A DNA stretch of 64,000 nt from Obrimoposthia wandeli (lineage: Eukaryota). The notes beneath the pieces are model-generated. The model saw only the letters and a list, made by a program, of their open reading frames with translations. It searched no databases and was not told where the DNA came from. The stretch spans positions 248,001-312,000 of the forward strand of contig CDROCS010004085.1 in NCBI GenBank assembly GCA_977020255.1, written 5' to 3'. The position numbers and the translations under genes were made by a program. How positions within the stretch are numbered: the stretch's first letter is position 1; each line of letters starts with the position of its first letter. This document shows, piece by piece, positions 5,284-27,315 of the stretch.

Positions 5284-6072
5284 TTACTCTGAAGGTGGAA
5301 AAAGCATCGTAGCAAGGTGGCGGTTAACATGCCTTGCTGCCGATGTTGCTGAATCAGCCTTACAGATAAAAGGTGTAACGGCTATCTTACCTTTCACTTC
5401 AACACGAAAAAAGGGTTTAGTATCGGGAACTTGGTACCATTTCATCTCTTTTGTCAAAAAAGTGGGTGCAACCGTGATATGAATGACGCGTAAGTCGGTT
5501 TTTGTTCTGACTGCAATTTGTGCAGCCCCACGTTGAAGTTTAGATGTTTTGTTTGGTGTCGTACGTGTACCTTCAGGAAATACGAGTAATACATTCCCAC
5601 TTTCTAAGCGTTGATTGCAGTCTTCAATTAAGCTTTCAGGATCTCGATTGGGTATATATCCCGCGGCTTTTACTATGCCTTTTATAAACGGGTTATGCCA
5701 AATACTGGCTTTAACTAAACAATCGCACTGTGGTAGGCACGAGGCAATAAGAACATAATCGATCAGACTTGGGTGATTGGCAACAATTAAGCAATTACGA
5801 TCTTGCTGCAGTGTTTCTACGCCTGTAAATTTGTAATCGATAGCGCCGAAAAATTGCATTGTTCGACAAAAAAAAGCAAAGGATTGCTGAATAACCGACT
5901 GTATACGCATTTCACGTTGATGCTGATTGTTAGCCGATATTGTCATGATTGGAAAAGCGATGAAGGTAAGGCAAAGCGCCCCTAAACCAAAAATAAAAAA
6001 ACATAGGCCAGTCGCAAATACTCGCCACAATTTGTTGATTCTTTGTTTGACTGTAAGAGGTCGAGATTCCAT
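5284..6072 (-). CDS. Lysophospholipid acyltransferase family protein (ApeD-like)
   Basis: NHPSLID (NHxxxxD) and FPEGTR motifs; ATG at 6072 preferred over the longer ORF start at 6135. Confidence 0.85.
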   Translation of the reverse strand: MESRPLTVKQRINKLWRVFATGLCFFIFGLGALCLTFIAFPIMTISANNQHQREMRIQSVIQQSFAFFCRTMQFFGAIDYKFTGVETLQQDRNCLIVANHPSLIDYVLIASCLPQCDCLVKASIWHNPFIKGIVKAAGYIPNRDPESLIEDCNQRLESGNVLLVFPEGTRTTPNKTSKLQRGAAQIAVRTKTDLRVIHITVAPTFLTKEMKWYQVPDTKPFFRVEVKGKIAVTPFICKADSATSAARHVNRHLATMLFPPSE

Positions 6073-6076
6073 CGTG

Positions 6077-6826
6077 CTAACGCTTCCAATGCCATAGCGT
6101 GCGAGGTGCAGCAATTGTCCATTCTTGTTTATCACTTATTAAATTAGCGATTACATTCAGTGTTTGCGGGTATTGCTGTTTTGACTCTTGTACGTTTTTA
6201 TTCTTGAGCCCAGCTTCCCAGGTTAACTGATAGCTATCTCCACCTGAAAGAATCATACCCAAGGCATAGCCGTGATATGTTGGCGTGTTTAGCTCTGCGG
6301 AATCAAATTCTTGATAGGGTTCAGGAAGAGGCTCATCGAAATCAACCAATAACACGTTATGTTCAGGGTTATCGCTTAAGTAAGCTGCACTTTCAATTAA
6401 AGCGGCATGAAGTGTGTTCTCGCAAGCACCGAGCGAGGTAACCGGAATCGCCTGTTTTGTTGCTATCGTGTATAAACCTGCAGCCGTATTATGTACTGAC
6501 TGAGAGAATGCAATCGGCGAGGCATCGTCACCCACTAAGATATCTTGCATTAACTTCACTGTTCTTGTGAGTTCGCCGTGGCGGCTGGCAAAAACGATAT
6601 AGTCAACTTTATGATTTTCCGTTAATGCGAGTGCTGTTTGCATTGCCAGTTTACTTAACGTGCTCATTCGACGGCGCATCATCGGCGGTATCAAATGATG
6701 AGGTACAGGCGTTAGTGGTTCTGGCCACAGCTTTTGATTGCTAGCCCACTCTTGCCACGCATTATGATCTGATAAGCCAGAAGATAGTGCGAGAAAATTA
6801 TTTATATTGAAATGTACACTGTTCAT
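6077..6826 (-). CDS. Beta-ketoacyl synthase chain-length factor (ApeC-like)
   Basis: PPMMRRRMS..SRHGE..SPIAFSQSVHN, typical of KS N-terminal-like CLF; first gene of the minus-strand cluster. Confidence 0.85.
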   Translation of the reverse strand: MNSVHFNINNFLALSSGLSDHNAWQEWASNQKLWPEPLTPVPHHLIPPMMRRRMSTLSKLAMQTALALTENHKVDYIVFASRHGELTRTVKLMQDILVGDDASPIAFSQSVHNTAAGLYTIATKQAIPVTSLGACENTLHAALIESAAYLSDNPEHNVLLVDFDEPLPEPYQEFDSAELNTPTYHGYALGMILSGGDSYQLTWEAGLKNKNVQESKQQYPQTLNVIANLISDKQEWTIAAPRTLWHWKR

Positions 6827-6988
6827 TTTTGGTATTGTATACTCGTTGGCTTATTAGTTCTATCAGTAATATTAATGAATGCGCCATAAGTTGCACTCTG
6901 GGTGAATGCATTTTTGTACTTGATTATCTGTTAACAATACAAAAAAACACCGATAAAAGCCCTTAACTATTAAGAAAAAGGAGAAACA

Positions 6989-7375
6989 ATGAAACTACTT
7001 AAAGGTCTGACCATTGCTGCAATATTATTAGCGGTTTCAGGTTGTAGTCGTGTACAACCAATCCATAATATAGAGAATACCCCAGTTGCTTATAACCTTC
7101 AAATTTCTCAGGTAAAACAATCGATTATCGAGTCTGGCATGAGCCGTGGTTGGATAATGACTGAAACTAAACCCGGTACTATTCGTGGCGAATATTCTAA
7201 GCGATCTCATGATGCAGTCATTGATGTTGAATACAATAATAAAACCTACTCAATTAACTACGTTAGTTCAGAAAACCTCAAGTATAGCGACGGTAAAATA
7301 CACCGTAACTATAACCGTTGGGTAAATAACCTTGATGTCGACATTAAGAAAAAGCTGGCGATGTTAGCCCTTTAA
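6989..7375 (+). CDS. Lipoprotein (ApeA-like)
   Basis: Lipobox VSGC after a hydrophobic signal; IHRNYNRWVNNL C-terminal motif; GGAGA RBS. Confidence 0.75.
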   Translation: MKLLKGLTIAAILLAVSGCSRVQPIHNIENTPVAYNLQISQVKQSIIESGMSRGWIMTETKPGTIRGEYSKRSHDAVIDVEYNNKTYSINYVSSENLKYSDGKIHRNYNRWVNNLDVDIKKKLAMLAL

Positions 7376-7563
7376 TTCTTAAAGCCGTTTAAGGGCGTGT
7401 ACCGTACATAAGATTTTATCGCGGCGTCACATTCTATTCATTTGATAGGTTATGATGTGGCGTGTTGATTGTGGAATTCAGAAATTCGTCATTTTTTTGT
7501 CCTTGAACAACATCTTATTATGATAATTTACTCAAACTACATATTTTATCTTTCGCTTTCATA

Positions 7564-8643
7564 TTGGATTTATCTGTGACTTTATATCAAAACGACCCAT
7601 TTAATGCACTTGATGCAAAAACAGAAGCTCAAAAGTTGGCTTTTGCTCCTATCGTTTTTCATACCGCAAGAACACTACGTGATTTAGGTATTCTTGCTGC
7701 ATTAGATCAAGCGGGCAAGCAAGGGCTCAATGCAGTAGATGTCGCTGCAAAAACCAATGTGAGTGAATATGGTGTAAAGGTCTTACTTGATATGGCATTA
7801 AGTGCGCATATTGTTACGTGGGATAAACCTAATTATGTTTTGGCGAATCTAGGCTATTTCTTAGCGAATGATGGGATGACTCGTGCCAATATGGATTTCA
7901 CTGCAGATGTTTGTTACGCCGCAATGATGCATTTGACCGAAGCGATAGAAGAGGGAACGCCTGCTGGTTTGAAAGAGCTGGGTGATTGGACAACGATCTA
8001 CGAAGGCTTGTCTCAGCTACCAGAAAAAGCGAAAGAGAGTTGGTTCAATTTCGATCATTTTTATTCAGATCGGTCTTTCCCTGTGTTACTCGAACGTGTA
8101 TTTGCCGATAAACCCAAGCGATTATTTGATATTGGTGGAAATACGGGTAAGTGGGCATTGCAATGCTGTAATCATAATCCTGATGTTGAAGTGACTATTA
8201 TTGATTTGCCTCAGCAGATCGAAATGGCATTAAAAAATGCGGATGAAAATGGTTTTGCTGATCGCATAAAAGGTTATCCAACCAATATGTTGGATGCTGC
8301 TAATTCACTGCCAACGGGTGCTGATGTGTGGTGGATGAGTCAGTTTTTGGACTGCTTTTCACCAATGGAAATCCTCAGTATTTTACGTCGTGTACGTGCC
8401 GCAATGTCTGATGATGCGAAGGTCTATATTCTTGAGTTGTTCTGGGATTCGCAACGCTACGATGCCGCTGCATACAGTTTGAATGCCACCTCGTTGTATT
8501 TCACATGCCTTGCTAATGGCAACAGTCGTTTTTATCGAAGTGATGATTTTCTAGAAATAGTCAAAGAGGCGGGTTTTGTGGTTGCAACACGTACCGACGA
8601 TATCGGGCTTGGTCATACTTTACTAGAACTAAAAGCGGGCTAA
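7564..8643 (+). CDS. SAM-dependent O-methyltransferase (ApeB-like)
   Basis: FDIGGNTGKW SAM motif, IIDLP, WMSQFLDCF; N-terminal dimerisation-like region; start codon uncertain (TTG). Confidence 0.85.
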   Translation: MDLSVTLYQNDPFNALDAKTEAQKLAFAPIVFHTARTLRDLGILAALDQAGKQGLNAVDVAAKTNVSEYGVKVLLDMALSAHIVTWDKPNYVLANLGYFLANDGMTRANMDFTADVCYAAMMHLTEAIEEGTPAGLKELGDWTTIYEGLSQLPEKAKESWFNFDHFYSDRSFPVLLERVFADKPKRLFDIGGNTGKWALQCCNHNPDVEVTIIDLPQQIEMALKNADENGFADRIKGYPTNMLDAANSLPTGADVWWMSQFLDCFSPMEILSILRRVRAAMSDDAKVYILELFWDSQRYDAAAYSLNATSLYFTCLANGNSRFYRSDDFLEIVKEAGFVVATRTDDIGLGHTLLELKAG

Positions 8644-8756
8644 TACTAAGGGCTGTTAAACGTTCATGCCATTAATATTGCCATTGGTAGATCTTTTACA
8701 GCCTGTTCTTATTCCAACCTAAATAAGTTATGAGCATTTACTTACCTCGATTGGTA

Positions 8757-9650
8757 TTACTCACTCAACGTTGGCAAGTTGGTATTCGCCACTTGGTATG
8801 AAAAAGTACTTGAATCTGCGGCTTCAAATAATGGTGTCGCTTGATCTAACCAATTCACAATGCGCTTTTGATTATCAGGAAAAGCGTTGGTCATTGCCCG
8901 GGCATGATTACAAGAATCTAATCGCCAGAAAGCTTTGTCACCAGAGAGTTGTTGATAAATTTCTTCGCCTGACGCTATGGGTACAATACTGTCTGATTCA
9001 CAGTGAATCACTAATGATTGCATTTCAGGTAAGGTCGCGACAATTTCTTTCGCCGCATAATTGTCACGCATTACAAGGTGCGCAACCCATGAATATAATT
9101 CTCCAAACGTCCCTTTATCTAATACAAATTTGGCTTCATCAACATAACTTGTAAACGATGAATCAATAATGATCCCATCAAGGTCAATAGGGTAATCAGC
9201 TAGTGCTCGCAAGAAGATATTACCGCCAGTAGACGTCGCAACAATGAAGGCGGGTAACTGAGTATTTGTTTGTAATTCTTCTATGTGTTTCAAAATACTG
9301 ATTGCGTCTAAATAGGCCGATTTATCGCCAGCAGTGCCCGTTGAATGACCAAAGCCAGAGTAATCAAACACCAATACATCATATCCGTGTTTTGCGAGCC
9401 AATCGACTTTTTCTTGTGTTTGCTCCATGTGTCCGCTGTTTCCATGGAAGTGCACAACAAAACCTCGATGCCTAATATCCTCTTCTGCTGGTATCCATAA
9501 ATGGGCAATGTGATTACCCGATTCTGACTCAATCCAGCGAATATCTGGGTTAAGATTTTGTGCTTTGGATGGCGAGAAAAAGGCTGTGTTTGCACACCCT
9601 TGAGTCAAAAATAAGATAACTATTAAACCAATGAAATTTTTCATTATCAC
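8757..9650 (-). CDS. Alpha/beta hydrolase, probable lipoprotein
   Basis: Lipobox TQGC; HFHGNSG, FDYSGFGHS, ATSTGG nucleophile elbow, IHCESDSIVP, CNHA. Confidence 0.8.
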   Translation of the reverse strand: MIMKNFIGLIVILFLTQGCANTAFFSPSKAQNLNPDIRWIESESGNHIAHLWIPAEEDIRHRGFVVHFHGNSGHMEQTQEKVDWLAKHGYDVLVFDYSGFGHSTGTAGDKSAYLDAISILKHIEELQTNTQLPAFIVATSTGGNIFLRALADYPIDLDGIIIDSSFTSYVDEAKFVLDKGTFGELYSWVAHLVMRDNYAAKEIVATLPEMQSLVIHCESDSIVPIASGEEIYQQLSGDKAFWRLDSCNHARAMTNAFPDNQKRIVNWLDQATPLFEAADSSTFSYQVANTNLPTLSE

Positions 9651-9910
9651 CCTCCCGATTTTGTTATTTGTACGGAAGAAAGTAGAAAATGGTTCATATT
9701 AATCTCATCTCATTATTTCTTATGATATTGATTGATGATTCAAAATGATATTCATTCACTAAATGTTAGTACTGCTGAGTATTCATCGTTAATTGAATGC
9801 AGATAATTTGGTATAATTCTCATAATAGAAATTACAATGATTTTATGAGCTAAAGAAAAGACGGGTTGTTATGAAACGTAATAACCATTACTTGAAGCTC
9901 ACTGCCGTTT

Positions 9911-11182
9911 TTGAGGATTTACCGTTTGAGTTCAAAACAGCGTACGCAAGTTGCAATTATTGGTGCTGGCCCTTCTGGTTCGGTTGCCGCGGCATTACTT
10001 CATCAAAAAGGGATTGAGGTGGTAGTGCTTGAGAAAAGTCTTTTCCCACGCTTTTCAATTGGTGAAAGTCTGTTACCTGCCTGTATGGAGGTGATAAAGA
10101 AAGCGAATATGCTATCAGCGGTTGAGCGTGCCCATTTTCAATTTAAAGATGGTGCGGCTTTTCGTCGGAATGGCAAATATACCTGTTTTAATTTTACAGA
10201 TAAGTTTACCGAAGGTGCAGGCACTACGTTTCAAGTACAGCGGGCAAATTTTGATAAAGTGCTTGCCGATGAAGCCGTTGAGCAAGGTATTGAAATTCGT
10301 TATCAACATACATTAATGGACATTGATATTACGGGTGAATGTTCAGTATTAACCGTCAATGATGAACACGATAAGAGTTATGAGTTAGACGCTGATTTTG
10401 TACTGGATGCAAGTGGTTTTGGGCGGGTACTTCCTCGTTTATTAGCATTAGAAGAACCGTCTAGTTTACCGACACGAAGAGCGGTGTTCACCCACATAGT
10501 CGACAATATCGATACATTAGTATCAGGAAATGCGGATTACGATCGCAATAAAATTTTAATCACAGTTCATCCAAAAAATCCGGATGTGTGGTATTGGCTA
10601 ATTCCATTTAGTAATGGAACGTGTTCGTTTGGCATCGTCGCAGAGCCTGCATTTTTTGCTGATTATTCAGAAGATAATATAGCGGCAATTAAACAACTCG
10701 CGAGCGAAGATCCCAGATTTCGTCAATTATTAGCCCAGGCAGAATTTCCCAACCCTGCGGGTGAAATTGGCGGTTATTCTGCGAATGTAAAAACCTTATG
10801 CAGCGATAAATTTGCGCTGTTAGGTAATGCGGGTGAATTTTTAGATCCTGTGTTTTCTTCTGGTGTCACCATTGCGATGAAATCATCTGAAATTGCGACA
10901 GATTTATTGGTTCGACACTTTAATGGCGACTCGATTGATTGGCAGAAAGAGTATGCCGATGCATTAATGATAGGGGTGAATACTTTTAGAGTTTATGTTG
11001 AAGGTTGGTATTCTGGTGAGCTGCAAGATGTGATTTTTCATGAAAACCCGGATCCTAAAATCAAGCAGATGATTTGTTCTATTTTGGCAGGGTACGCATG
11101 GGATACGACCAATCCATTTGTTGCTCAACCTGAACGTCGGTTACGTATCATTGCTGAAATTTGTCGAGATACGAAAAACTAA
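9911..11182 (+). CDS. FAD-dependent oxidoreductase, halogenase-like
   Basis: IGAGPSG FAD motif, PRFSIGESLLP, WYWLIP (WxWxIP), FLDPVFSSG. Confidence 0.85.
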   Translation: MRIYRLSSKQRTQVAIIGAGPSGSVAAALLHQKGIEVVVLEKSLFPRFSIGESLLPACMEVIKKANMLSAVERAHFQFKDGAAFRRNGKYTCFNFTDKFTEGAGTTFQVQRANFDKVLADEAVEQGIEIRYQHTLMDIDITGECSVLTVNDEHDKSYELDADFVLDASGFGRVLPRLLALEEPSSLPTRRAVFTHIVDNIDTLVSGNADYDRNKILITVHPKNPDVWYWLIPFSNGTCSFGIVAEPAFFADYSEDNIAAIKQLASEDPRFRQLLAQAEFPNPAGEIGGYSANVKTLCSDKFALLGNAGEFLDPVFSSGVTIAMKSSEIATDLLVRHFNGDSIDWQKEYADALMIGVNTFRVYVEGWYSGELQDVIFHENPDPKIKQMICSILAGYAWDTTNPFVAQPERRLRIIAEICRDTKN

Positions 11183-11387: not shown

Positions 11388-12044
11388 ATGCATATTACGA
11401 ATAAAACATTTACTGAACATGATTTTAGTGAGCAAGATCTTCAAGATGCTCATTTTGAAAATTGTCAGTTTTATCGTTGTAATTTTAATCGGACAAATTT
11501 ATCTGATGCATCGTTTATCGAATGCCAATTCATTGAACGTGGCGATGTAAATGGTTGTAAATTTGAATATGCAAAATTAAAAGACGCGAGTTTTAAGCAT
11601 TGTGATTTGAGCATGGCGCAATTTAGAGGCGCTCAGTGTTTTGGCATTGAATTGAGAGACAGCCAGTTAAAAGGGGCAGATTTTGTGTTGGCTAGTTTTG
11701 CGAATTACATAACCCACAATACCTTCTTTTGCTCTGCCTACATTTCCCGCTGTAATTTATCGTATGCTAATTTTGAAAATCAACGCTTAGAAAAATGTGA
11801 ATTATTTGAAAATAAATGGAATGGTGCCAATCTATTAGGTGCTACATTCAAGGGCTCTGATTTAAGCCGTGGTGAATTTTCGCAAGAAGCATGGGGGCAA
11901 TTCGATATGACGGAATGTAACTTGTGTCATGTTGATCTTACAGGGCTTGATATTCGTCGGGTAAGTCTTGCAAAGGTGACTATTTGCGATTGGCAGCAAG
12001 AGCAATTGCTTGAGCCTTTAGGGGTTATTGTAATACCGGGTTAA
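11388..12044 (+). CDS. qnr: Qnr-family pentapeptide repeat protein
   Basis: 218 aa of pentapeptide repeats with Qnr-like loop B (FANYITHNTFFCSAYI), LEKCELFENKW and C-terminal WQQEQLLEPLGVIVIPG. Confidence 0.88.
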   Translation: MHITNKTFTEHDFSEQDLQDAHFENCQFYRCNFNRTNLSDASFIECQFIERGDVNGCKFEYAKLKDASFKHCDLSMAQFRGAQCFGIELRDSQLKGADFVLASFANYITHNTFFCSAYISRCNLSYANFENQRLEKCELFENKWNGANLLGATFKGSDLSRGEFSQEAWGQFDMTECNLCHVDLTGLDIRRVSLAKVTICDWQQEQLLEPLGVIVIPG

Positions 12045-13439: not shown

Positions 13440-13487
13440 AAAAACAGCCCCCTATTTTCACTAAAATGGAAATAGGGGGCTGTTTTT
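13440..13487. terminator. Bidirectional intrinsic terminator
   Basis: AAAAACAGCCCCCTATTT / AAATAGGGGGCTGTTTTT, an 18-bp perfect stem between convergent genes. Confidence 0.9.
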
Positions 13488-13503: not shown

Positions 13504-14328
13504 TTAACACACCAAATATTGTTGTTTTACTAGCTCTTTTTTAGTTGATATCTGCTGGTTTCTCTTACTTAATACAGCACATTTAGGGCAACCATTCCCT
13601 GCGAGATGATTCGATGGTAGTTGCATGAAATCACCATGTAGCGAGCAAATAATCGTGCCCTTTGTTCGTACATTCACATAGCCAAATAAGCTGTAATCAT
13701 AGCGTTCACCGTGAATGAACTTTGCTTGTAGCATGAATTGTTCGTTGGTTTTATTTTTGCTCTTTTTCGCGCAAAGCGGACAACCGACACCGCGTATATG
13801 GGCATCGGGTCGTTGTTCAAAATCCCCGTGTTCAGGGCAGGTAATAATGGCTTTAGAGAGTGCACCTGTATAAATGAATTTCGAATAATCGTATTTACCC
13901 GCATGTACCTTTATCGCTTCATTTACGATCACTTCGCGGCTTTTTGGGTATGATTTCGAGCATTTTGGACACCCTTTACCTGAGAGGTGGGCATTGGGGC
14001 GCTGTTCAAAATTACCATGCACGGGGCATGAAATCACACCTTTAGTCAGTGCGCCTAGGTATTCAAACTGGCTATAGTTATATTTTTTACCATGCAGCTT
14101 TTGGGCTGATAAAACAAATTGCTCTTTTGTTTTCTTTTCTTTGCCAGCACACTTTGGGCACCCTCTGCCAGCAAGGTGTGCATCAGGGCGTTGTTCAAAA
14201 TCGCCATGAAGTGTACAGGTTACGAGACTTTTTGTTTTAGCATTCAGATAAATGAAGTTTTCATAACGGTATAGTTGGCTATGAACATGATGTGCTTCTT
14301 TAATAAATATTTCGGTTGTCTTTTTCAT
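13504..14328 (-). CDS. Four-repeat putative zinc-binding DNA-binding protein (DUF723/CapR-like), no nuclease domain
   Basis: Four ~63-aa repeats, approximately F..A..VHG.KY.YS.F.Y.GA..K..I.CP.HG.FEQRP.AHL.G.GCPKC, fill the whole ORF. Confidence 0.75.
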   Translation of the reverse strand: MKKTTEIFIKEAHHVHSQLYRYENFIYLNAKTKSLVTCTLHGDFEQRPDAHLAGRGCPKCAGKEKKTKEQFVLSAQKLHGKKYNYSQFEYLGALTKGVISCPVHGNFEQRPNAHLSGKGCPKCSKSYPKSREVIVNEAIKVHAGKYDYSKFIYTGALSKAIITCPEHGDFEQRPDAHIRGVGCPLCAKKSKNKTNEQFMLQAKFIHGERYDYSLFGYVNVRTKGTIICSLHGDFMQLPSNHLAGNGCPKCAVLSKRNQQISTKKELVKQQYLVC

Positions 14329-14871
14329 TTAATTGAACTGCCATTGATTACTACTTAAACGAATACTGTTTCATTGCATGGTTGGCACACGATTGAAATA
14401 GCGATTTTTTACTCGTAAAGGTATGTGTAAATATGTTTAATAATAAGTATTCTTATGAACAAGAAGGTGTTCGTAATAACCGTATGCTCTTGTTTTATAT
14501 ATTTCTCTTTTATTGAAAAACAAGCAACACTCAAAAATGAAAATCATTGTTGCATTTTTTATGATGGCGGTCACAGTTTGTATGATGTAAATTTCAACCA
14601 TCAAGTTTCTAATGAAGAACACGTCAATATTAATGATTCCAAAAACTTTTTATAAGTACAGGTGATCCACATTGCAGTTTTTGTAATTAAATAAAACCTT
14701 GGACGTTTATTTTAAGGGTTTTTCCTTTTGATATGAATGTGCTCTTAGTATTTTAAGTAATTACATATATTGTAATAGTGATAAAGGATGGACGTTGTTT
14801 TCTTGATTAATAAAGTATTGCCGTAAGGAGTAGGTGGATATAAATACTGTTTAATGTAAGAGGAATAATCT

Positions 14872-16039
<1,168 letters not shown>

Positions 16040-16126
16040 TTATTTAGCGTCTTAGCTATTAACAATCTCTAGCCACTATTTATCTTATTTATCGTTAATT
16101 TAATTTATAAAAATTTGGAGTCATTC

Positions 16127-16363
16127 ATGGATATCGTAAGTGCAGTTCTTTACGTTGCTGGCGCACTATTAATTGGTTTAGGTGCGGCAGGTGCTGCAAG
16201 TGGTATTGGTAACTTGGCGGGTAAATACCTTGAAGGTGTGGCGCGTCAACCTGATCTTACTCCAATGCTTCGAACACAGTTCTTCATCATGATGGGTCTT
16301 GTCGATGCGGTTCCAATGATCGGTGTTGGTATTGGTCTATATATCATTTTCGCTGTTGCTTAA
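16127..16363 (+). CDS. atpE: ATP synthase F0 subunit c
   Basis: ARQPDL loop and GLVDAVP with the carboxylate Asp; GGAG at 16117-16120 favours ATG 16127 (78 aa). Confidence 0.95.
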
Positions 16364-16447
16364 TAAATGACTATTGCGGTGATACAGCGCGAAGTACTTG
16401 ATGTTTAGCGCTGTTGTTACCAAGCATTAATTAAAGAGTGAGGATGT

Positions 16448-16918
16448 ATGAATTTAAATGCAACCATGCTTGGCCAAGCAATATCCTTCGTGATTTTTGT
16501 ATGGTTATGTATGAAATACGTATGGCCACCATTGACCGCATTGATAGATGAACGTCAGCGTGAAATAGCCGAAGGGCTTAGCCAAATGGATCTAGCGGCT
16601 AAAGAACTTGAATTAGCAAAGGCCAACGGTGATCAACTGATGGTTGAAGCGAAACAAAGTGCTAGTGATTTGGTTGAACAAGGCAATAAACGCCGTAATC
16701 AAATTATTGAAGATGCCAAGCTAGAAGGTGATACCGAGAAATCGCGCATTATTGCTCAAGGTCAATCAGAGCTTGAAAGTGAGCGCAATCGCCTAAGGCA
16801 AGAACTTCGTCAAGAAATGTCAGATTTGGTTATCGAAAGCGCGGAAAAATTGATTAAACGCAACCTTGATAATGCTGCAAACCGTGAATTTGTTAATAAG
16901 CTAATTACGGAAATGTAA
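16448..16918 (+). CDS. atpF: ATP synthase F0 subunit b
   Basis: MNLNATMLGQAISFVIFVWLCMKYVWPPL followed by coiled coil; 156 aa. Confidence 0.95.
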   Translation: MNLNATMLGQAISFVIFVWLCMKYVWPPLTALIDERQREIAEGLSQMDLAAKELELAKANGDQLMVEAKQSASDLVEQGNKRRNQIIEDAKLEGDTEKSRIIAQGQSELESERNRLRQELRQEMSDLVIESAEKLIKRNLDNAANREFVNKLITEM

Positions 16919-16932
16919 TCGGGGAGATCACC

Positions 16933-17481
16933 ATGTCAGATCTAAAAACGATAGCTCAACCTTATGCCAAAGCCGCGTTTGATTTTGCTTTAGCCAATAA
17001 GTCGCTCGACCAGTGGGCATACATGTTAATGGCCGCAGCAGATGTTGCTCACCAGCCCGTGATTCTTCAGGAAATCAAAGAGATTGATTTCAAAGGCGCG
17101 AAAAACGCCGAGGCTTTTACTCAGATGTTTTTAGATATCTGTGAAGGCTTACTTGATGAACATGGTCAGAATTTTGTTCGAGTGATGGCTGAAAATAGCC
17201 GATTAAGTGTTCTTCCTGACGTTCTAAATCTTTTCATGGAAATGAAAGCGGACTTTGAACGCACTATAGAAGCGACAGTGTTATCTGTTGAACCATTAAC
17301 GGAAGAACAAAAAGTTAATTTGGTTAAAGCATTAGAAAAGCGTCTTTCTCGCAGTGTTGAGTTGGATTGTCAGATAGATGAATCGCTTGTTGGCGGCATG
17401 CTTATCAAAGCTGGAGAACTGGTTATTGATGGCACTCTCAAGAGCTCGATAAACCGACTAGCAAGTAGTCTACAAGCGTAA
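16933..17481 (+). CDS. atpH: ATP synthase F1 delta subunit
   Basis: TIAQPYAKAAF..LVGGMLIKAGELVIDGT. Confidence 0.95.
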   Translation: MSDLKTIAQPYAKAAFDFALANKSLDQWAYMLMAAADVAHQPVILQEIKEIDFKGAKNAEAFTQMFLDICEGLLDEHGQNFVRVMAENSRLSVLPDVLNLFMEMKADFERTIEATVLSVEPLTEEQKVNLVKALEKRLSRSVELDCQIDESLVGGMLIKAGELVIDGTLKSSINRLASSLQA

Positions 17482-17493
17482 CGGGTAATAGAT

Positions 17494-19035
17494 ATGCAAT
17501 TAAATTCAAATGAAATCAGCGATCTAATTAAACAACGTATCGCAACCTTTAATGTGACGAGCCAAGCTCGCAACGAAGGCACAATCGTCTCGGTAAGTGA
17601 CGGTATTATTAGTATTGATGGCCTTGCTGATGTAATGCAGGGCGAGATGATTGAACTACCAGGTAATCGCTACGCATTGGCGCTTAACCTAGAGCGTCAT
17701 TCCGTAGGTGCTGTGGTAATGGGTCCGTATTCGGATCTTGCCGAAGGTCTTAAAGTAAAAGGGACTGGACGTATTCTTGAAGTACCAGTAGGTCGTGGCT
17801 TGCTAGGCCGTGTTCTGAATACGCTCGGCCAACCGATTGACGGTAAAGGTGCAATTGAAAATGATGGTTATTCACCCGTCGAAATTATTGCCCCTGGTGT
17901 TATTGAACGTCAATCAGTCGATCAGCCTATCCAAACGGGTTATAAAGCGGTTGATTCCATGGTGCCAATTGGTCGTGGACAACGTGAACTGATTATCGGT
18001 GACCGTCAAACGGGTAAAACGGCGATGGCGATCGACGCCATTATTAACCAGAAAGATTCTGGTATTAAATGTGTTTACGTGGCGATTGGTCAGAAAGCAT
18101 CAACCATTGCTAACGTAGTACGTAAGCTGGAAGAGCACGACGCGTTAAAAAATACGATTGTGGTTGTTGCAACAGCATCTGATGCGGCTGCACTGCAATA
18201 TTTAGCGCCTTATTCTGGTTGCACCATGGGTGAATATTTCCGTGACCGTGGTGAAGATGCACTGATTGTTTATGATGATCTGTCTAAACAAGCGGTTGCT
18301 TACCGTCAAATCTCACTACTGCTTAAGCGCCCACCGGGTCGTGAAGCTTTCCCTGGCGATGTGTTCTACCTCCACTCTCGTCTGTTAGAGCGCGCATCTC
18401 GTGTCAACGTTACATATGTTGAACGCTTTACTAAAGGTAAAGTAAAAGGCAAAACGGGGTCGTTAACAGCACTACCAATTATCGAAACCCAAGCGGGTGA
18501 TGTATCAGCTTTCGTACCGACGAATGTGATCTCGATTACTGATGGACAGATCTTCCTACAAACGCATTTATTTAACTCGGGTTTACGCCCAGCGGTTGAC
18601 CCTGGTATTTCGGTATCTCGTGTTGGCGGTGCGGCGCAAACGAAAATTGTGAAGAAACTGTCGGGTGGTATTCGTACTGCACTTGCTCAGTATCGTGAAC
18701 TTGCGGCTTTTGCTCAGTTCTCATCAGATCTTGATGAAGCAACACGTAAGCAACTTGATCACGGTGAAAAAGTGACAGAGTTGATGAAGCAAAAGCAGTA
18801 CGCACCAATGTCTGTTGCAGAGCAAGCGCTCGCTATTTTCTCTGCTGAAAAAGGCTATTTAGGTGATGTGCCACTAGCCAATATTGGGGATTTTGAATCT
18901 GCATTAATGGCGTATGCGAAAAGCGAACACTCGGCGTTGCTAGATACCATCAATCAGACGGGTCAATACAACGACGATATTGAACAAAGCCTGCACAAGC
19001 TACTGAAAACATTCACGGCGACACAGTCGTGGTAA
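17494..19035 (+). CDS. atpA: ATP synthase F1 alpha subunit
   Basis: GDRQTGKT P-loop, [23 protein letters not shown]-type motif; 513 aa. Confidence 0.98.
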
Positions 19036-19109
19036 ATCGAAACAGGGTAAATACAGCGTGGTAAAACTCGCTGACTTCAACCCATCGTGAATGTTGATAG
19101 GAGCTTAAA

Positions 19110-19985
19110 ATGGCAAACGCAAAAGAAATTCGCACCAAGATAGCGAGCGTACAAAATACGCAAAAGATCACCAGTGCAATGGAAATGGTTGCCGCAAGTA
19201 AGATGCGGAAGGTGCAAGACAACATGGCGGCAACCCGTCCTTACGCTGAAAACATGCGTAAGGTAATCAGCCATGTTGCATCTGGCTCATTAGAATATAA
19301 GCACCCCTATCTTGAAGAGCGTGAAGCAAAACGTGTGGCGTACATCATCATATCTTCAGATAGAGGCTTATGTGGTGGCTTAAATAGCAACTTGTTTAAG
19401 CGAGCCTTAACAGATATGCGCCAATGGCAAGAGAAAAACGTTGAAGTCGATTTGACGTTAATCGGTTCAAAAGCTATTTCGTTTTTCCACCGTTTTGGCA
19501 ATGTTATTGCGCAAACATCGGGTTTGGGTGATAAGCCTAAATTGGAAGATCTACTCGGTGCTGTTAAAGCCATGCTTGAGCACTTTGATGACGGTAAAAT
19601 TGATCGCTTGTATTTGGTATACAACGAGTTCGTTAATACGATGGTACAGAATCCACGCATAACGCAATTATTGCCTCATCCAGATAAAGATGAGTCGCAA
19701 GACAGTAAACCCAATAACGGAACTAGCCGTTGGGATTACATCTACGAGCCTGAACCAAAAGACATACTCAACGCCTTAATGCTGCGTTACATCGAATCTC
19801 AGGTGTATCAAGGCACCGTTGAAAGTATCGCTTGTGAGCAAGCCGCAAGAATGGTCGCGATGAAATCGGCGACAGATAATGCAGGCGACATTATTAACGA
19901 TTTGCAGCTGGTTTATAACAAAGCCCGCCAAAGTGCTATAACCCAAGAGCTAAGTGAAATCGTAGCCGGTGCACAAGCCGTTTAA
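19110..19985 (+). CDS. atpG: ATP synthase F1 gamma subunit
   Basis: [34 protein letters not shown]. Confidence 0.97.
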
Positions 19986-21392
<1,407 letters not shown>

Positions 21393-21407
21393 GTTTGAGG
21401 AGGATTT

Positions 21408-21851
21408 ATGGCTATCGGCGTTACTCAGAATACATTCCAACTCAACATTGTGAGTGCAGAAGGTCCGTTATTTAGTGGAAAAGCACATGCTTTGGCTATT
21501 TCGGGTCTTGATGGTGAACTTGGTATTCGCCCTGGTCACTCTCCTTTGCTGAGTCGTATTAAACCTGGCGTTGCTTGTTTTCAAACTGATTTGAAAGGGG
21601 ATGACGAAGTTCTCTACATTTCAGGCGGTATTCTTGAGGTTCAACCTTCATTAGTAACGGTACTGGCTGATACAGCCATGCACGGTAAAGATATTGATGA
21701 AGCTCGTGCGAATGAAGCACGACGTGCAGCAGAAGAGAATATTAATAAGCAGGGTCACGATATCAACTTTGCGCAAGCGCAGATGGATTTGGCGAAAGCA
21801 ATGGCGCAATTACGTGCCGTTGAATTAACCCAAAAACAGAGGCGTCGCTAA
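21408..21851 (+). CDS. atpC: ATP synthase F1 epsilon subunit
   Basis: GELGIRPGHSPLL, ISGGILEVQP, C-terminal helices. Confidence 0.95.
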   Translation: MAIGVTQNTFQLNIVSAEGPLFSGKAHALAISGLDGELGIRPGHSPLLSRIKPGVACFQTDLKGDDEVLYISGGILEVQPSLVTVLADTAMHGKDIDEARANEARRAAEENINKQGHDINFAQAQMDLAKAMAQLRAVELTQKQRRR

Positions 21852-22891: not shown

Positions 22892-23596
22892 TTGGACTTA
22901 CTACACGTTGAAGGGAATCAGCACTATATCGTGCCTGATGGTAGAGCAGACGTTATCTTTACATTCGATGTTCAGGTGGGAGGACAATTAAGCAATATTA
23001 TGCCAATTATCTCCCCTCTTTTTACGAAAGCTCACTTAATAAGGGTCGGTGCCCATCAAGGTTTCATCGGACTTCGATTGAGAGCTGGTTCAGCAGGTGC
23101 TTTCCTAAGAACGCCACTTTCTAGAATCGCTGGCAACCTCCAATATGGGAAACATGCAGTAGGTCATGTATCTTGGATCCGCGATCTTTGTCGTGACAAA
23201 AACAACACGAGCCAGCTAATCACGAATATTAACCAACATGTTTGTGCAGCCCCATCGCAGGCAAAGTCTACAATGGTTTTGGATATTCTAAGCTTAATAA
23301 ACGAAGCTCAAGGTATCACGCAAATCAACAATATTGCACACCAGATAAAAGTGTCTGAACGAACAATCAACAGACAATTTACGAATGCTGTGGGTTTATC
23401 CCCCAAGCAATTTTCATCCATAGCTAGGTTAAGAAGGGCAATTGACTGCCTAACTAACCCATCTTATGCCATTTCATCTATAGCTGTAGATTGTGGTTTT
23501 TCAGACCAAGCCCACACGACAAGAGAAATCAAAAGCTACATGGGTCAAACACCGACCCTATTACGTAAAATGTTAGATACAGAAATTCTTCTCTAG
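22892..23596 (+). CDS. AraC-family HTH transcriptional regulator, possibly 5'-truncated
   Basis: IVPDGRADVIF N-terminal motif; C-terminal VGLSPKQF..R and CGFSDQAH AraC signature; TTG start. Confidence 0.8.
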   Translation: MDLLHVEGNQHYIVPDGRADVIFTFDVQVGGQLSNIMPIISPLFTKAHLIRVGAHQGFIGLRLRAGSAGAFLRTPLSRIAGNLQYGKHAVGHVSWIRDLCRDKNNTSQLITNINQHVCAAPSQAKSTMVLDILSLINEAQGITQINNIAHQIKVSERTINRQFTNAVGLSPKQFSSIARLRRAIDCLTNPSYAISSIAVDCGFSDQAHTTREIKSYMGQTPTLLRKMLDTEILL

Positions 23597-24260: not shown

Positions 24261-27200
24261 ATGACTAAGTTAATCGAAGAAATAAAACTTGGATTATCAC
24301 AAGCTACGCTTAAAAACCGTATTGTAATGGCTCCTATGACCATTCAGTCCGCTTTTTTTGATGGTGGTGTCACGCAGGAGATGGTTGATTATTACGCTTC
24401 TCGTTCAGGCGATGCCGGCGCAATCATCGTTGAAAGTGCTTTCGTTGAAAATTACGGTCGAGCTTTTCCTGGTGCGTTAGGTATTAATAGCGACAGCAAA
24501 ATTGCGGGACTTAAAAAGCTTGCAACCGCCATTAAAGCAAAAGGTTCCAAAGCGATTCTTCAAATCTACCATGCCGGACGTATGGCAAACGGGGAATACA
24601 ATGGCGGTCATCAGCCAATTTCTGCTAGTCCAGTAGCCGCACTTCGCGACAGCGCAGAAACCCCTATTGAGCTGACTCAAGAACAAATCGAAGGCATGAT
24701 CGAGAACTTTGGTCATGCAGTAAATCGTGCAATTCTTGCGGGATTTGAGGGTGTTGAAATTCATGGCGCCAATACATACCTTATCCAACAATTCTTCTCA
24801 CCTCATTCAAACCGCCGTACTGACAAATGGGGTGGCGATATTGAAAAGCGCACAGCATTTCCGGTAGCGATATTAGAAGAAGCAAAGAAAGTTGTTGCCT
24901 CTCACCAGTTAACAGATTTCATTATTGGCTACCGCTTCTCTCCTGAAGAAATTGAAGAGCCAGGTATTCGCTTTGAAGATAGTATGTTTCTTCTTGATAA
25001 GCTTGCAACATGTGGCCTTGATTACTTCCACTTCTCAATGGGGAACTACACCCGAAATTCTATTGTGAATCCTGTAGATAAAGAGCCTCTCATTAGTAAA
25101 TACCATACTCTGAAGTCTGAAAGTGTTGCTAAGATTCCCGTCATTGGTGTGGGTGGAATCGCCCAGCGCTCTGATGCTGATAATGCCATCGAACAAGGTT
25201 ATGACCTGGTAAGCATTGGTAAAGGCTTTCTAGTTGAGCCAACATGGGCAACGAAAGCGATTAACGGTGAGCTTTGTGCAGAATTTGCAGATATCGCACA
25301 GCAAGAAGAACTAATGATTCCTACTCCGTTGTGGGAAATCATGGATTACATGATTGTTGATAGTGCTGCCGAGGCATTGAAACACCAACGTATCAAAAAA
25401 CTTCAGAATATTGACATTAAGTTCGAGCCTGGTGAATACACGGCTTATGGCTATGGTCACAACGGTAAACTGCCTGTAACTGTGACACTCTCTGAAGACA
25501 GAATTCTTGAGGTGTTGGTTGATTCATCGAAGGAATCTGATGGTATCGCGAACCCTGCATTTGAACGGATTCCTCAACAAATTCTCGATGGTCAAACACT
25601 AAACATTGACGTTATCTCGGGCGCAACAGTAAGTAGTCAGGCCGTTATTGATGGCGTATCCAATGCTGTAGATTTGGCTGGTGGTAACTCAGAAGCGCTT
25701 CGCTGTAAGGCTCGTGAAGCTGTGGAATGGTCAACGGAAACTATCGAAGAAACCGTTGACGTTGTGGTGGTTGGCGGCGGTGGTGCGGGTTTGAGTGCTG
25801 CACTGACAGCGTTAGACAGCGGCAAGTCTGTTGTCGTACTTGAGAAGTTCCCTGCTATTGGTGGCAACACTGTTCGCACTGGTGGTTGGGTTAACGCCGC
25901 TGAACCTCAGTGGCAAAAAGACTTCCCAGCGATTGCAGGTGAAGCTGACTACTTAAAAGGTATTGCTGATACCCCAGAGTCCGACATTGCACAAGAGTAC
26001 CTATCGGATTTCCGTGCACTTAAAGATCAATTGGCTAACTACTTCCTCGATATTGAAAGTGGCAAAAACTATCTATTTGATTCAATGGAACTTCATTTAA
26101 TCCAAACGTATCTTGGTGGTAAACGAACTAACCTTGATGGTGCGTCAATCCATGGTCAGTATGATCTTGTTCATACTCTTACCAGTCGTGCTATGGAATC
26201 GATCGATTGGCTGACAGAAAAAGGCATCGATTTTAACCGCGATATGGTTGATATCGCTGTCGGTGCGCTATGGCGCCGTGCACATAAGCCAAATCGTCCA
26301 AAAGGTGTTGAGTTTGTTGAGAAACTTCAAAAACACATCATTGCTCAAGGTGGACGCATTATCACCGATACGCGTGCTGAAGATTTAATTGTTGAAGATA
26401 GTAAGGTCGTCGGCATTAAAGCAACTCATTCTAATGGCACCAAATACAAACTGAATACGAATCATGGTGTGGTGCTAGCTTCTGGTGGTTTTGGTGCAAA
26501 CACGAAAATGCTTCAAAAGTACAACAACTATTGGAACGAGATCGCGGATGACATTAAAACGACTAACTCACCGGCGCTAATTGGTGACGGTATTGAGATT
26601 GGTGAAAAAGCAGGTGCTGATTTAGTTGGTATGGAATACATCCAACTAATGCCAATTGGCGACCCTAAATCTGGTGCGCTTCTCACTGGTCTAATTGTTC
26701 CACCTGAAAACTTCGTTTTTGTTAACAAGCAAGGTAAGCGATTCGTTGATGAGTGCGAGAGCCGCGATGTTCTTTCTAACTCATTCTTTGATAACGGTGG
26801 CGTGGTTTACATGATTGCTGACGAAGAGATTCGCAAGACCGCTGCCAATACGACTTACGAAACAATTGAGCGCGAAATTGAGGAAGGCGTCATCATAAAA
26901 GCTGACTCTATTGAAGAGTTGGCGGAGAAAATTGATGTTCCGCCAGCCGAACTCTCCGAGACCATTCGTCGCTATAATTCTTATGTAAATGAAGGTCGTG
27001 ATCCTGAGTTCCATAAGGGTGCGCTTGGCCTGAAAGTTGAGAAGGCTCCGTTCTACGCAACACCACGTAAACCATCTGTTCACCATACTATGGGTGGTCT
27101 GAAGATCGATGCCAAAGCTTGTGTATTGGATAAAAATGGCTTACCTATCCCAGGCTTATATGCCGCTGGTGAGATAACTGGTGGTATTCATGCCGGTAAC

Positions 27201-27272
27201 CGTCTAGGTGGTAACGCTTTGATTGATATATTCACTTACGGTCGCATTGCGGGCGACAGTGTATCTGAATGA
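24261..27272 (+). CDS. Multidomain NADH-dependent flavoprotein reductase (OYE domain + covalent FMN domain + FAD-binding flavocytochrome-c-type domain)
   Basis: OYE: MAPMT, EIHGANTYL, GYRFSPEE; flavinylation site DVISGAT (Thr456); FAD domain: VGGGGAG, HHTMGG, GNRLGGNAL; no signal peptide. Confidence 0.9.
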   Translation: MTKLIEEIKLGLSQATLKNRIVMAPMTIQSAFFDGGVTQEMVDYYASRSGDAGAIIVESAFVENYGRAFPGALGINSDSKIAGLKKLATAIKAKGSKAILQIYHAGRMANGEYNGGHQPISASPVAALRDSAETPIELTQEQIEGMIENFGHAVNRAILAGFEGVEIHGANTYLIQQFFSPHSNRRTDKWGGDIEKRTAFPVAILEEAKKVVASHQLTDFIIGYRFSPEEIEEPGIRFEDSMFLLDKLATCGLDYFHFSMGNYTRNSIVNPVDKEPLISKYHTLKSESVAKIPVIGVGGIAQRSDADNAIEQGYDLVSIGKGFLVEPTWATKAINGELCAEFADIAQQEELMIPTPLWEIMDYMIVDSAAEALKHQRIKKLQNIDIKFEPGEYTAYGYGHNGKLPVTVTLSEDRILEVLVDSSKESDGIANPAFERIPQQILDGQTLNIDVISGATVSSQAVIDGVSNAVDLAGGNSEALRCKAREAVEWSTETIEETVDVVVVGGGGAGLSAALTALDSGKSVVVLEKFPAIGGNTVRTGGWVNAAEPQWQKDFPAIAGEADYLKGIADTPESDIAQEYLSDFRALKDQLANYFLDIESGKNYLFDSMELHLIQTYLGGKRTNLDGASIHGQYDLVHTLTSRAMESIDWLTEKGIDFNRDMVDIAVGALWRRAHKPNRPKGVEFVEKLQKHIIAQGGRIITDTRAEDLIVEDSKVVGIKATHSNGTKYKLNTNHGVVLASGGFGANTKMLQKYNNYWNEIADDIKTTNSPALIGDGIEIGEKAGADLVGMEYIQLMPIGDPKSGALLTGLIVPPENFVFVNKQGKRFVDECESRDVLSNSFFDNGGVVYMIADEEIRKTAANTTYETIEREIEEGVIIKADSIEELAEKIDVPPAELSETIRRYNSYVNEGRDPEFHKGALGLKVEKAPFYATPRKPSVHHTMGGLKIDAKACVLDKNGLPIPGLYAAGEITGGIHAGNRLGGNALIDIFTYGRIAGDSVSE

Positions 27273-27287
27273 GCTTAGTTAAATAAA

Positions 27288-27315
27288 AGGGAAGCCAAAA
27301 GCTTCCCTCTCTTTT
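27288..27315 (+). terminator. Terminator-like hairpin between the reductase gene and apbE
   Basis: AGGGAAGC-CAAAA-GCTTCCCT followed by CTCTTTTT. Confidence 0.65.

What the first reader, a model, noticed from the sequence alone, without database searches (positions are those of the whole stretch)
13504..14328. Nuclease-less homing-endonuclease-type repeat protein divergent from the atp operon (possible domesticated regulator or phage-interference factor)
Seen: the whole protein is four ~63-aa repeats, each with CxxH-x9-H-x5-CxxC (HGxFEQRPxAHLxGxGCPKC). There is no appended GIY-YIG, HNH, T5orf172 or PD-(D/E)xK domain. It has a strong terminator and shares a ~540-bp AT-rich divergent region with atpI. 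Established: such repeats (DUF723/CapR-homology) are DNA-binding modules of phage free-standing endonucleases, and the V. cholerae PLE protein CapR is a nuclease-less derivative that represses phage ICP1 capsid genes. Inference: a chromosomal gene with no satellite or prophage around it, which may bind phage DNA or regulate the adjacent atp operon. A truncated phage relic is the alternative, but the ORF is intact and cleanly terminated.
Basis: partly seen in the sequence, partly recalled or inferred. Interest (0 to 1): 0.72.

Follow-up and report, generated by a model that had tools for sequence, protein, structure and literature searches.

The report
Nuclease-free zinc-ribbon protein beside second ATP synthase
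This is an intact, strongly conserved Photobacterium gene made only of the four zinc-binding DNA-recognition repeats that phage homing endonucleases use, without their cutting domain. In nearly every species examined it sits back-to-back with the cell's second ATP synthase operon, so it is a candidate for that operon's unknown regulator.

Summary
ORF 13504-14328 (-) encodes 274 aa built from four 60-64-aa repeats, each carrying C-x2-H-x9-H-x5-C-x2-C. It matches Pfam DUF4379 and DUF723 and has no nuclease domain. A strong bidirectional terminator follows it, and a 543-bp, 29% GC region separates it from the atp operon.

New findings:
- The window comes from the Photobacterium profundum clade. 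The operon is the chromosome-2 "ATPase-II" operon (PBPRB0129-0137), and the gene corresponds to PBPRB0128, which published RNA-seq data show with an 86-nt 5'UTR.
- Orthologues with four repeats and no nuclease occur in all 13 genomes that carry the gene. They are always divergent from atp-II, while the other flank varies.
- The gene tree recovers the same major clades as the atp-II tree. dN/dS is 0.03-0.06.
- Of the 109 closest non-Photobacterium relatives, 83 carry a C-terminal tail of nuclease-domain size, of DUF559 or T5orf172 type in 82.

It is therefore a domesticated, vertically inherited DNA-binding array, not a relic. A role as local regulator of atp-II is plausible but unproven. P. 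leiognathi keeps atp-II and its conserved promoter core without this gene at the locus, and Vibrio atp-II operons lack both the gene and the core. Phage interference is disfavoured.

The parts
13504..14328 (-). CDS of the 274-aa four-repeat Zn-ribbon protein (orthologue of P. profundum PBPRB0128); the stop codon is 13504-13506
14149..14328 (-). Repeat 1 (residues 1-60; Zn ligands C38, H41, C57, C60, plus conserved H51)
13960..14148 (-). Repeat 2 (residues 61-123; C101, H104, H114, C120, C123)
13771..13959 (-). Repeat 3 (residues 124-186; C164, H167, H177, C183, C186)
13579..13770 (-). Repeat 4 (residues 187-250; C228, H231, H241, C247, C250), the most divergent repeat
13507..13578 (-). C-terminal tail (residues 251-274). 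Its length (23-49 aa) and sequence vary across the genus, model confidence is low, and it holds no nuclease remnant
13440..13487 (.). Bidirectional intrinsic terminator hairpin shared with the convergent EamA gene
14329..14871 (.). 543-bp, 29% GC divergent control region between the repeat-protein gene and atpI2
14472..14646 (.). 175-bp block that is 96-97% identical among profundum-clade species, against 71-85% in the flanks. It covers most of the ~178 bp between the two transcript 5' ends mapped across from SS9. No RNA structure and no Rfam family
14533..14554 (+). Genus-wide conserved core AAAAATGAAAATCATTGTTGCA, about -70 to -49 from the inferred atp-II transcription start. It is retained in P. 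leiognathi, which lacks the gene at this locus, and is absent upstream of Vibrio atp-II
14588..14593 (+). Conserved -10-like TAAATT of the atp-II promoter. The SS9 RNA-seq 5' end (263-nt UTR) maps to about window 14603
   Evidence: position transferred by alignment; inference
14872..15270 (+). atpI-like first gene of the second F1Fo operon (orthologue of PBPRB0129)
15272..21851 (+). atpBEFHAGDC of the chromosome-2 type 'ATPase-II' operon

Best explanation
The gene is a domesticated derivative of a phage-type free-standing homing endonuclease. It has kept only the array of four treble-clef-like Zn-ribbon DNA-recognition modules and lost the nuclease. It entered the slot upstream of the second F1Fo ATP synthase operon (ATPase-II) in an ancestor of Photobacterium and has since been inherited vertically with that operon under strong purifying selection. 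I propose that the basic (pI ~9.4), four-zinc protein binds specific DNA in the shared divergent control region and tunes transcription of atp-II and/or of itself, most likely as a repressor or modulator that contributes to the known tight silencing and conditional induction of ATPase-II. Shown here: the architecture, the loss of the nuclease, the locked synteny, the selection and the transcription. Inferred: DNA binding, the target and the sign of regulation.
For: Architecture and ancestry:
- Four repeats with invariant Zn ligands across 40 homologues.
- DUF4379 and DUF723 score above Pfam thresholds. PHROG 681 'endonuclease' matches at 7e-91, but only its central repeat part, profile positions 237-432 of 576.
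- Of the 109 best non-Photobacterium relatives, 83 carry a C-terminal tail of at least 90 aa. 68 form one cluster of DUF559/Vsr-like type (one member, P0012, reaches PF04480 at 24.5 bits against a 20.6 cut-off) and 14 are T5orf172-like.
- The nuclease parts of both tail HMMs find nothing in the orthologues or in the DNA downstream of them.
- The AlphaFold model has pLDDT 90.8. Each repeat is a helix, a beta-hairpin ribbon and a short helix. 219 viral predicted structures match at E<=1e-3, including T5orf172, GIY-YIG and CapR-homology proteins.

Domestication:
- dN/dS is 0.03-0.06 where dS is 0.12-0.61.
- Identity to distant orthologues is 56-69%, similar to AtpH2 (55-68%) and above AtpI2 (35-55%).
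- Orthologous repeats are 63% identical against 50% for paralogous repeats, so each repeat has kept its own identity.
- GC and GC3 match the neighbouring genes.

Linkage:
- In all 13 genomes that carry the gene it lies divergent from atpI2, with a 497-589-bp AT-rich spacer. The other flank is EamA, VF530, ppsA or bioD.
- The gene tree recovers the same four major clades as the atp-II tree.

Expression and the open question:
- SS9 RNA-seq lists an 86-nt 5'UTR for PBPRB0128 and a 263-nt 5'UTR for PBPRB0129.
- ATPase-II transcripts are about 100-fold lower than ATPase-I in rich medium and are induced 15-27-fold when ATPase-I is disrupted; the paper says the mechanism is unknown (PMC10054830).
- The region lying mostly between the two transcript 5' ends mapped across from SS9 is 96-97% identical within the clade, against 71-85% in the flanks.
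- The protein is basic, with pI 9.3-9.8.
- Related CapR Zn-finger domains bind DNA and repress a promoter (PMC8096241).
Against: - No DNA-binding or regulatory experiment exists for this protein.
- P. leiognathi has atp-II and a 23/24-conserved promoter core but no copy or remnant of the gene at the locus. The gene is therefore dispensable for atp-II there, and the best-conserved cis element is probably not its operator.
- Vibrio atp-II operons lack the gene.
- No motif was found in the spacer that is both repeated and specific to genomes carrying the gene, apart from 13 bp next to the core, which could equally be the gene's own promoter.
- Conserved adjacency can persist by descent alone.
- Expression values for PBPRB0128 could not be retrieved because the table was cut when stored.
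Confidence: 0.42

Rival explanations
1. It is a domesticated DNA- or RNA-binding protein with a cellular role unrelated to atp-II, such as regulation of distant genes, nucleoid association, or binding the long atp-II 5'UTR RNA. In this reading its position beside atp-II is only inherited adjacency.
For: Purifying selection and vertical inheritance show that it has a function but not what it acts on. P. leiognathi runs atp-II, with the conserved core, without the gene at this locus. Vibrio atp-II lacks it. No operator tied to the gene was found.
Against: The atp-side junction is intact in all 13 genomes, whereas the other flank changed at least four times. The spacer length is held at 497-589 bp and contains a block far more conserved than synonymous sites.
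Confidence: 0.3
2. It is a phage-interference or immunity factor. The nuclease-free array would occupy the recognition sites of related phage homing endonucleases or phage promoters, as CapR does, protecting the host or blocking phage gene expression.
For: 740 phage records, 294 of them from Vibrio phages, encode relatives. CapR is a precedent for a nuclease-free relative that represses phage genes. Repeat arrays are proposed to be an evolvable recognition device (PMC10448857).
Against: There is no PADLOC hit and no defence-island, satellite or prophage context. Inheritance is vertical across the genus at one locus. dN/dS of 0.03-0.06 and position-specific conservation of each repeat are the opposite of arms-race diversification. 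All CapR-like precedents reside on mobile elements.
Confidence: 0.12
3. It is a decaying relic of a homing endonuclease or prophage gene with no function.
For: It lacks the nuclease that most of its closest relatives carry. It is absent from the locus in P. leiognathi.
Against: The ORF is intact in 13 genomes spanning four major clades, and all 16 Zn ligands are invariant. dN/dS is 0.03-0.06. It is transcribed from its own start. It has its own terminator.
Confidence: 0.03

Closest known systems
Free-standing phage homing endonucleases with DUF723/DUF4379/CapR-type Zn-finger arrays fused to DUF559 (Vsr-like PD-(D/E)xK) or T5orf172 nuclease domains (PHROG 681/559; PMC10448857)
   Same: They share the same repeat module with 37-49% identity over the whole array, the same ligand pattern and the same predicted fold.
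   Different: Here there is no nuclease domain and there are four repeats rather than the usual five. The gene is chromosomal, vertically inherited and not in a mobile element.
CapR of the Vibrio cholerae phage satellite PLE (PMC8096241)
   Same: Both are nuclease-free derivatives of a homing-endonuclease Zn-finger DNA-binding domain. CapR binds a promoter region and represses transcription, which is the working model proposed here.
   Different: CapR has a CxxC...CxC motif and resides on a satellite that targets phage ICP1. Here the motif is CxxH...CxxC, present four times, PF21817 scores below threshold (15.2 against 24.2 bits), and the gene is a core-like chromosomal gene beside a housekeeping-type operon.
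WhiA (actinobacterial/Firmicute transcription factor derived from a LAGLIDADG homing endonuclease; PMC3240954, seen, otherwise from my own knowledge)
   Same: It is a precedent for a catalytically dead homing-endonuclease scaffold retained as a vertically inherited bacterial transcription factor.
   Different: The fold is unrelated (LAGLIDADG plus HTH) and there is no homology; this is an analogy only.
Divergently transcribed local regulators of bacterial operons (general class)
   Same: Conserved head-to-head arrangement with a long AT-rich control region, and back-to-back transcript 5' ends about 180 bp apart.
   Different: No HTH or other recognised transcription-factor domain is present, and binding and regulation are untested.

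Membership tests
DUF723 / DUF4379 treble-clef Zn-ribbon repeat family (PF05265, PF14311) | Profile match above the Pfam gathering score | tested here: met
   DUF4379 37.3 bits (cut-off 24.5); DUF723 33.7 bits (cut-off 20.9)
DUF723 / DUF4379 treble-clef Zn-ribbon repeat family (PF05265, PF14311) | Conserved four-ligand Zn knuckle pair in every repeat | tested here: met
   C-x2-H...C-x2-C occurs four times and is invariant in 40 homologues and 13 orthologues. Zinc binding itself is not testable here.
CapR homology domain (PF21817) | Profile match above the gathering score | tested here: not met
   15.2 bits against a cut-off of 24.2, E = 0.025
CapR homology domain (PF21817) | CxxC ... CxC cysteine pairs 24-26 residues apart (PMC8096241) | tested here: not met
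   Here the pattern is CxxH-x15-CxxC
CapR homology domain (PF21817) | Sequence-specific promoter binding and repression | not testable with these tools
   Needs EMSA, footprinting or genetics
Free-standing homing endonuclease (T5orf172, GIY-YIG, HNH or DUF559 type) | A nuclease domain joined to the DNA-binding array | tested here: not met
   No Pfam or NCBIfam nuclease hit. The nuclease parts of both tail HMMs find nothing in the orthologues or in downstream DNA.
Free-standing homing endonuclease (T5orf172, GIY-YIG, HNH or DUF559 type) | Mobile, patchy distribution in phage or mobile-element context | tested here: not met
   Fixed locus, and the gene tree recovers the same major clades as the atp-II tree. 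No mobile-element genes nearby.
Local transcription regulator of the divergent operon | Conserved divergent gene pair with a shared control region | tested here: met
   All 13 genomes that carry the gene
Local transcription regulator of the divergent operon | Regulator and target operon co-occur phyletically | tested here: inconclusive
   The gene was never seen without atp-II, but atp-II occurs without the gene at the locus in P. leiognathi and in Vibrio. An unlinked copy in P. leiognathi could not be checked.
Local transcription regulator of the divergent operon | Binding to an operator in the control region, and an effect on transcription | not testable with these tools
   A conserved block and core exist, but which protein binds them is unknown
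Known anti-phage defence systems (PADLOC-DB 2.0) | Match to a defence-protein model | tested here: not met
   0 families at E<=1
I-TevI-type zinc finger or any solved Zn-ribbon DNA-binding fold | Significant structural or sequence similarity to a solved structure | tested here: not met
   PDB phmmer best E = 0.3. Foldseek against PDB: whole protein best E = 8e-4 with TM 0.19; single repeat best E = 0.34.

The most novel reading that the evidence does not exclude
The protein is the missing local switch of the second ATP synthase. In this reading a homing-endonuclease DNA-recognition array was co-opted in the Photobacterium ancestor to hold ATPase-II silent and release it when the primary ATP synthase fails or conditions change (pressure, medium). 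That would be the first case of a DUF723-type endonuclease array recruited to regulate core bioenergetics.
Probability: 0.3. Interest if true: 0.72.

Novelty: new variant of a known kind. Interest (0 to 1): 0.55.

Why it matters
Domestication of homing-endonuclease DNA-binding domains is documented for a phage satellite (CapR) and, with an unrelated fold, for WhiA. This would be a chromosomal, genus-wide, vertically inherited example from the very abundant DUF723/DUF4379 repeat class, for which I found no solved structure and no reported cellular function.

It also offers a concrete, testable candidate for a stated open question in P. profundum: what keeps the chromosome-2 ATP synthase roughly 100-fold down and induces it when ATPase-I is disrupted (PMC10054830). 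The natural absence of the gene from the P. leiognathi locus, and the back-to-back transcript 5' ends reported for SS9 and transferred here by alignment, provide ready-made controls for that test.

Tried and rejected
- **Structured RNA or sRNA in the spacer.** Rfam found nothing relevant at E<=1. Folding z-scores for the conserved block were +1.7 and +0.2. The SS9 sRNA table lists no sRNA there.
- **A 66-aa ORF (14455-14655, +) inside the conserved block.** It is not conserved as an ORF; by eye, the same frame in the P. rosenbergii sequence contains a stop. The block is also conserved at synonymous positions.
- **A nuclease remnant in the C-terminal tail or downstream DNA.** None was found.
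- **Solved-structure relatives.** None were found by sequence or by fold.
- **A defence system.** No PADLOC hit.
- **The AraC-family gene that occupies the slot in P. leiognathi.** I asked whether it is orthologous to the AraC genes downstream of atp-II in the window and in L022. It is not; only the HTH region aligns, at about 31-32% identity. I give it no weight.
- **The core as a Fur box.** It matches 14 of 19 positions of the E. coli consensus as I recall it. This comes from memory and was not scored with a matrix, so it is a lead only.
- **Searching the window for further copies of the core.** The result is uninformative, because my pattern was one base longer than the window's own copy.
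- **The V. scophthalmi atp-II locus.** It is uninformative because three IS copies replace its upstream part.
- **Expression values for PBPRB0128.** The table was cut when stored.
- **The large representative-protein search.** I did not run it, because no claim here rests on the absence of relatives.

Full report
**1.

ORF 13504-14328 on the minus strand encodes 274 aa. The motif C-x2-H-x9-H-x5-C-x2-C occurs exactly four times, ending at residues 60, 123, 186 and 250. This divides the protein into repeats of 60, 63, 63 and 64 aa that are 43-53% identical to one another, followed by a 24-aa tail.

Pfam places the repeats in DUF4379 ('probable treble clef zinc finger', 37.3 bits) and DUF723 (33.7 bits), both above their thresholds. 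The CapR homology domain scores only 15.2 bits against a cut-off of 24.2. PHROG 681 ('endonuclease') matches at 7e-91, but only over its central positions 237-432 of 576. NCBIfam and PADLOC give nothing useful.

A hairpin at 13440-13487 (dG -29.9 kcal/mol, z = -6.7) with U-runs on both strands terminates this gene and the convergent EamA gene. The spacer to the next gene is 543 bp at 29% GC. No phage, satellite or integrase genes are nearby. GC and GC3 match the neighbours.

**2. Where the window comes from and which operon this is**

The genome scan returned 92-93% identical orthologues in P. frigidiphilum, P. indicum and P. profundum ATCC BAA-1252, with the same gene order: halogenase, pentapeptide protein, VF530, EamA, this gene, atpI-like, atpBEFHA.

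Two papers identify the operon as the chromosome-2 'ATPase-II' of P. profundum SS9, PBPRB0129-0137, with PBPRB0129 as the AtpI-like ORF (PMC3505737; PMC10054830). The RNA-seq UTR table of PMC3505737 lists PBPRB0125(+), 0126(-), 0127(+, COG class GER), 0128(-) and 0129(+), the same order and strands as in the window. It gives an 86-nt 5'UTR for PBPRB0128 and a 263-nt 5'UTR for PBPRB0129. PBPRB0128 is therefore the orthologue of this gene, and it is transcribed from its own start.

**3. Relatives and loss of the nuclease**

The word search found more than 7,500 relatives. Among the best 120, 11 are Photobacterium proteins of 273-316 aa with four repeats and a short tail.

The other 109 mostly have five repeats. 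83 of them carry a C-terminal extension of at least 90 aa:

| C-terminal extension | Count | Basis |
|---|---|---|
| One cluster with consensus ...D-F-y-x-P...I-E-x-x-G-x-Q-H | 68 | One member (P0012) reaches Pfam DUF559 above threshold, i.e. Vsr-like PD-(D/E)xK |
| T5orf172/MUG113-like | 14 | |
| Other | 1 | |
| Short tail of 30 aa or less (repeat-only) | 10 | |

HMMs of both nuclease tails find no nuclease part in the Photobacterium proteins or in the DNA downstream of them. The other genome-scan hits I inspected are nuclease-bearing and sit in a prophage (L008, Acinetobacter) or next to an integrase-sized ORF that I did not scan against any family (L007, Mariniflexile). 740 phage records encode relatives, 294 of them from Vibrio phages.

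**4. It is domesticated, not decaying**

Thirteen genomes carry the gene: the window, frigidiphilum, indicum, profundum, damselae, kishitanii, sp. S4TG1, rosenbergii, satsumensis, kagoshimensis, sanguinicancri, jeanii and an SRA assembly. In the ten orthologues aligned, the four repeats align without gaps and every Zn ligand is invariant, while the tail varies in length (23-49 aa) and sequence. The other three are called at 273-299 aa with the same Pfam families.

- In the repeat region dN/dS is 0.03-0.06 wherever dS is unsaturated (0.12-0.61).
- Divergence (56-69% identity to distant species) equals that of the delta subunit encoded next door and is less than that of AtpI2.
- Orthologous repeats are more alike (63%) than paralogous ones (50%). 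The four-repeat array was therefore fixed before the genus radiated, and each position has kept its own sequence signature.
- The protein is basic, with pI 9.3-9.8.

AlphaFold gives a confident model (pLDDT 90.8). Each repeat is a helix, a beta-hairpin ribbon and a short helix. The arrangement between repeats is less certain (pTM 0.57). No solved structure resembles it, whereas 219 predicted viral structures do.

**5. Linkage to atp-II**

In all 13 genomes the gene is divergent from atpI2 across a 497-589-bp spacer at 25-31% GC. The gene on its other side is EamA, VF530, ppsA or bioD. The gene tree recovers the same four major clades as a concatenated AtpI-B-F-H-A tree.

There are exceptions in the other direction:
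- P. leiognathi is nested inside the gene-bearing lineages as sister to the kishitanii clade (100/99 support). It has atp-II but no copy or remnant at the locus. An AraC-family gene and 1.3 kb of AT-rich DNA lie between VF530 and atpI2.
- Two Vibrio loci carrying a related atp operon on ~2-3-Mb contigs have a two-component system or cobA upstream instead.

The gene was therefore gained in the Photobacterium lineage and apparently lost at least once.

**6. The control region**

Within the profundum clade a 175-bp block (14472-14646) is 96-97% identical, while the flanks are 71-85% identical and synonymous sites of the adjacent gene have dS up to 0.6. It has no RNA-structure signal and no Rfam match.

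Across the genus only a 22-27-bp core survives (window 14533-14554, AAAAATGAAAATCATTGTTGCA), followed about 33 bp later by a conserved GTAaATT. Transferring the SS9 5' end (263 nt upstream of atpI2) by alignment puts the atp-II transcription start near 14603. That is 10 nt after the TAAATT at 14588-14593, which I read as the -10 element. The core then spans about -70 to -49, an activator-like position, and I saw no good -35 element by eye (inference). The PBPRB0128 5' end maps near 14425, about 178 bp away on the other strand.

The core is 23/24 conserved in P. leiognathi and absent upstream of Vibrio atp-II. It is therefore a Photobacterium-specific atp-II promoter element that does not depend on this gene being next to it. 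Only the 13 bp just beyond the core (AACAWSCAASnnCC) are conserved exclusively in gene-bearing species. That stretch could be an operator or simply part of the gene's own promoter.

**7. Interpretation**

What the gene is can be stated with high confidence: a nuclease-free, vertically inherited, selected derivative of a DUF723-type homing endonuclease.

What it does is inferred. The model that best explains the locked head-to-head arrangement, the constrained spacer, the DNA-binding ancestry and the basic charge is a local DNA-binding regulator of the divergent promoters. This is attractive because ATPase-II is about 100-fold lower than ATPase-I in rich medium, rises 15-27-fold when ATPase-I is disrupted, and responds to pressure and to a toxR mutation, with an unknown mechanism.

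The P. leiognathi case shows the gene is not required for atp-II to be retained, and that the strongest cis element is probably bound by something else. I therefore hold this model at about 0.4. The rivals are:
- a cellular nucleic-acid-binding role unrelated to atp-II (0.3);
- phage interference (0.12), disfavoured by the lack of diversification, defence context or mobility;
- a functionless relic (0.03).

**8. Comparison and novelty**

The gene belongs to the DUF723/DUF4379 repeat family. It is not a CapR-family member by the Pfam criterion or by ligand pattern, and it is not a homing endonuclease because the nuclease is absent. It may work like CapR (promoter binding by a nuclease-free array). 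As a vertically inherited bacterial gene it is analogous to WhiA.

I found no paper mentioning PBPRB0128's domain content or linking DUF723 proteins to ATP synthase.

I rate it a new variant of a known kind, with interest 0.55.

Noticed in passing
window 14472-14646: A 175-bp intergenic block is 96-97% identical among four species whose synonymous divergence reaches 0.6, while the flanks are 71-85% identical. It covers most of the interval between the two divergent transcript 5' ends mapped across from SS9. It has no RNA structure and no Rfam family.
   Followed up: partly
window 14533-14554 and 14588-14593; L018:4677-4749: A Photobacterium-wide promoter core and a -10-like element lie upstream of atp-II. 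They are retained in P. leiognathi, which lacks the repeat-protein gene at this locus, and are absent from Vibrio atp-II. The core matches 14 of 19 positions of the Fur-box consensus as I recall it (untested).
   Followed up: partly
L018:2603-5000, L019: In P. leiognathi an AraC-family gene plus 1.3 kb of AT-rich non-coding DNA occupies the slot between VF530 and atpI2 where the repeat-protein gene lies in sister clades. This AraC gene is not orthologous to the AraC genes found downstream of atp-II elsewhere.
   Followed up: partly
window 22892-23596; L022:12578-13435; L023:12645-13511: Unrelated AraC-family regulator genes lie roughly 0.6-1 kb downstream of atpC in several species. This is probably coincidence, but it could bear on atp-II regulation.
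   Followed up: partly
window 11388-12044: A 218-aa pentapeptide-repeat protein, which looks Qnr-like to me; the orthologue of PBPRB0125 carries a 224-nt 5'UTR in SS9.
   Followed up: no
window 5284-11182: A cluster encoding a Ketoacyl-synt_2 protein, an acyltransferase, an O-methyltransferase, an alpha/beta hydrolase and a Trp-halogenase-like flavoprotein (aryl-polyene-like or lipid biosynthesis). The same genes flank the locus in P. kishitanii.
   Followed up: no
L021:1296-6044 (Vibrio scophthalmi): Three copies of a DDE_Tnp_1 IS element replace atpI and atpB of the second atp operon, so the operon looks inactivated in that strain.
   Followed up: no
P. profundum SS9 chr2 154678-154929 (PMC3505737, supplement table S10): A 252-nt 5'UTR is listed for PBPRB0134 (atpA2 by gene order), suggesting an internal transcription start within atp-II. 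This agrees with the failure to amplify atp-II intergenic junctions from cDNA reported in PMC10054830.
   Followed up: no
window 24261-28283: A 1003-aa fusion protein with Oxidored_FMN, FMN_bind and FAD_binding_2 domains is followed by an ApbE flavin transferase. This may be an extracytoplasmic flavinylated reductase module.
   Followed up: no
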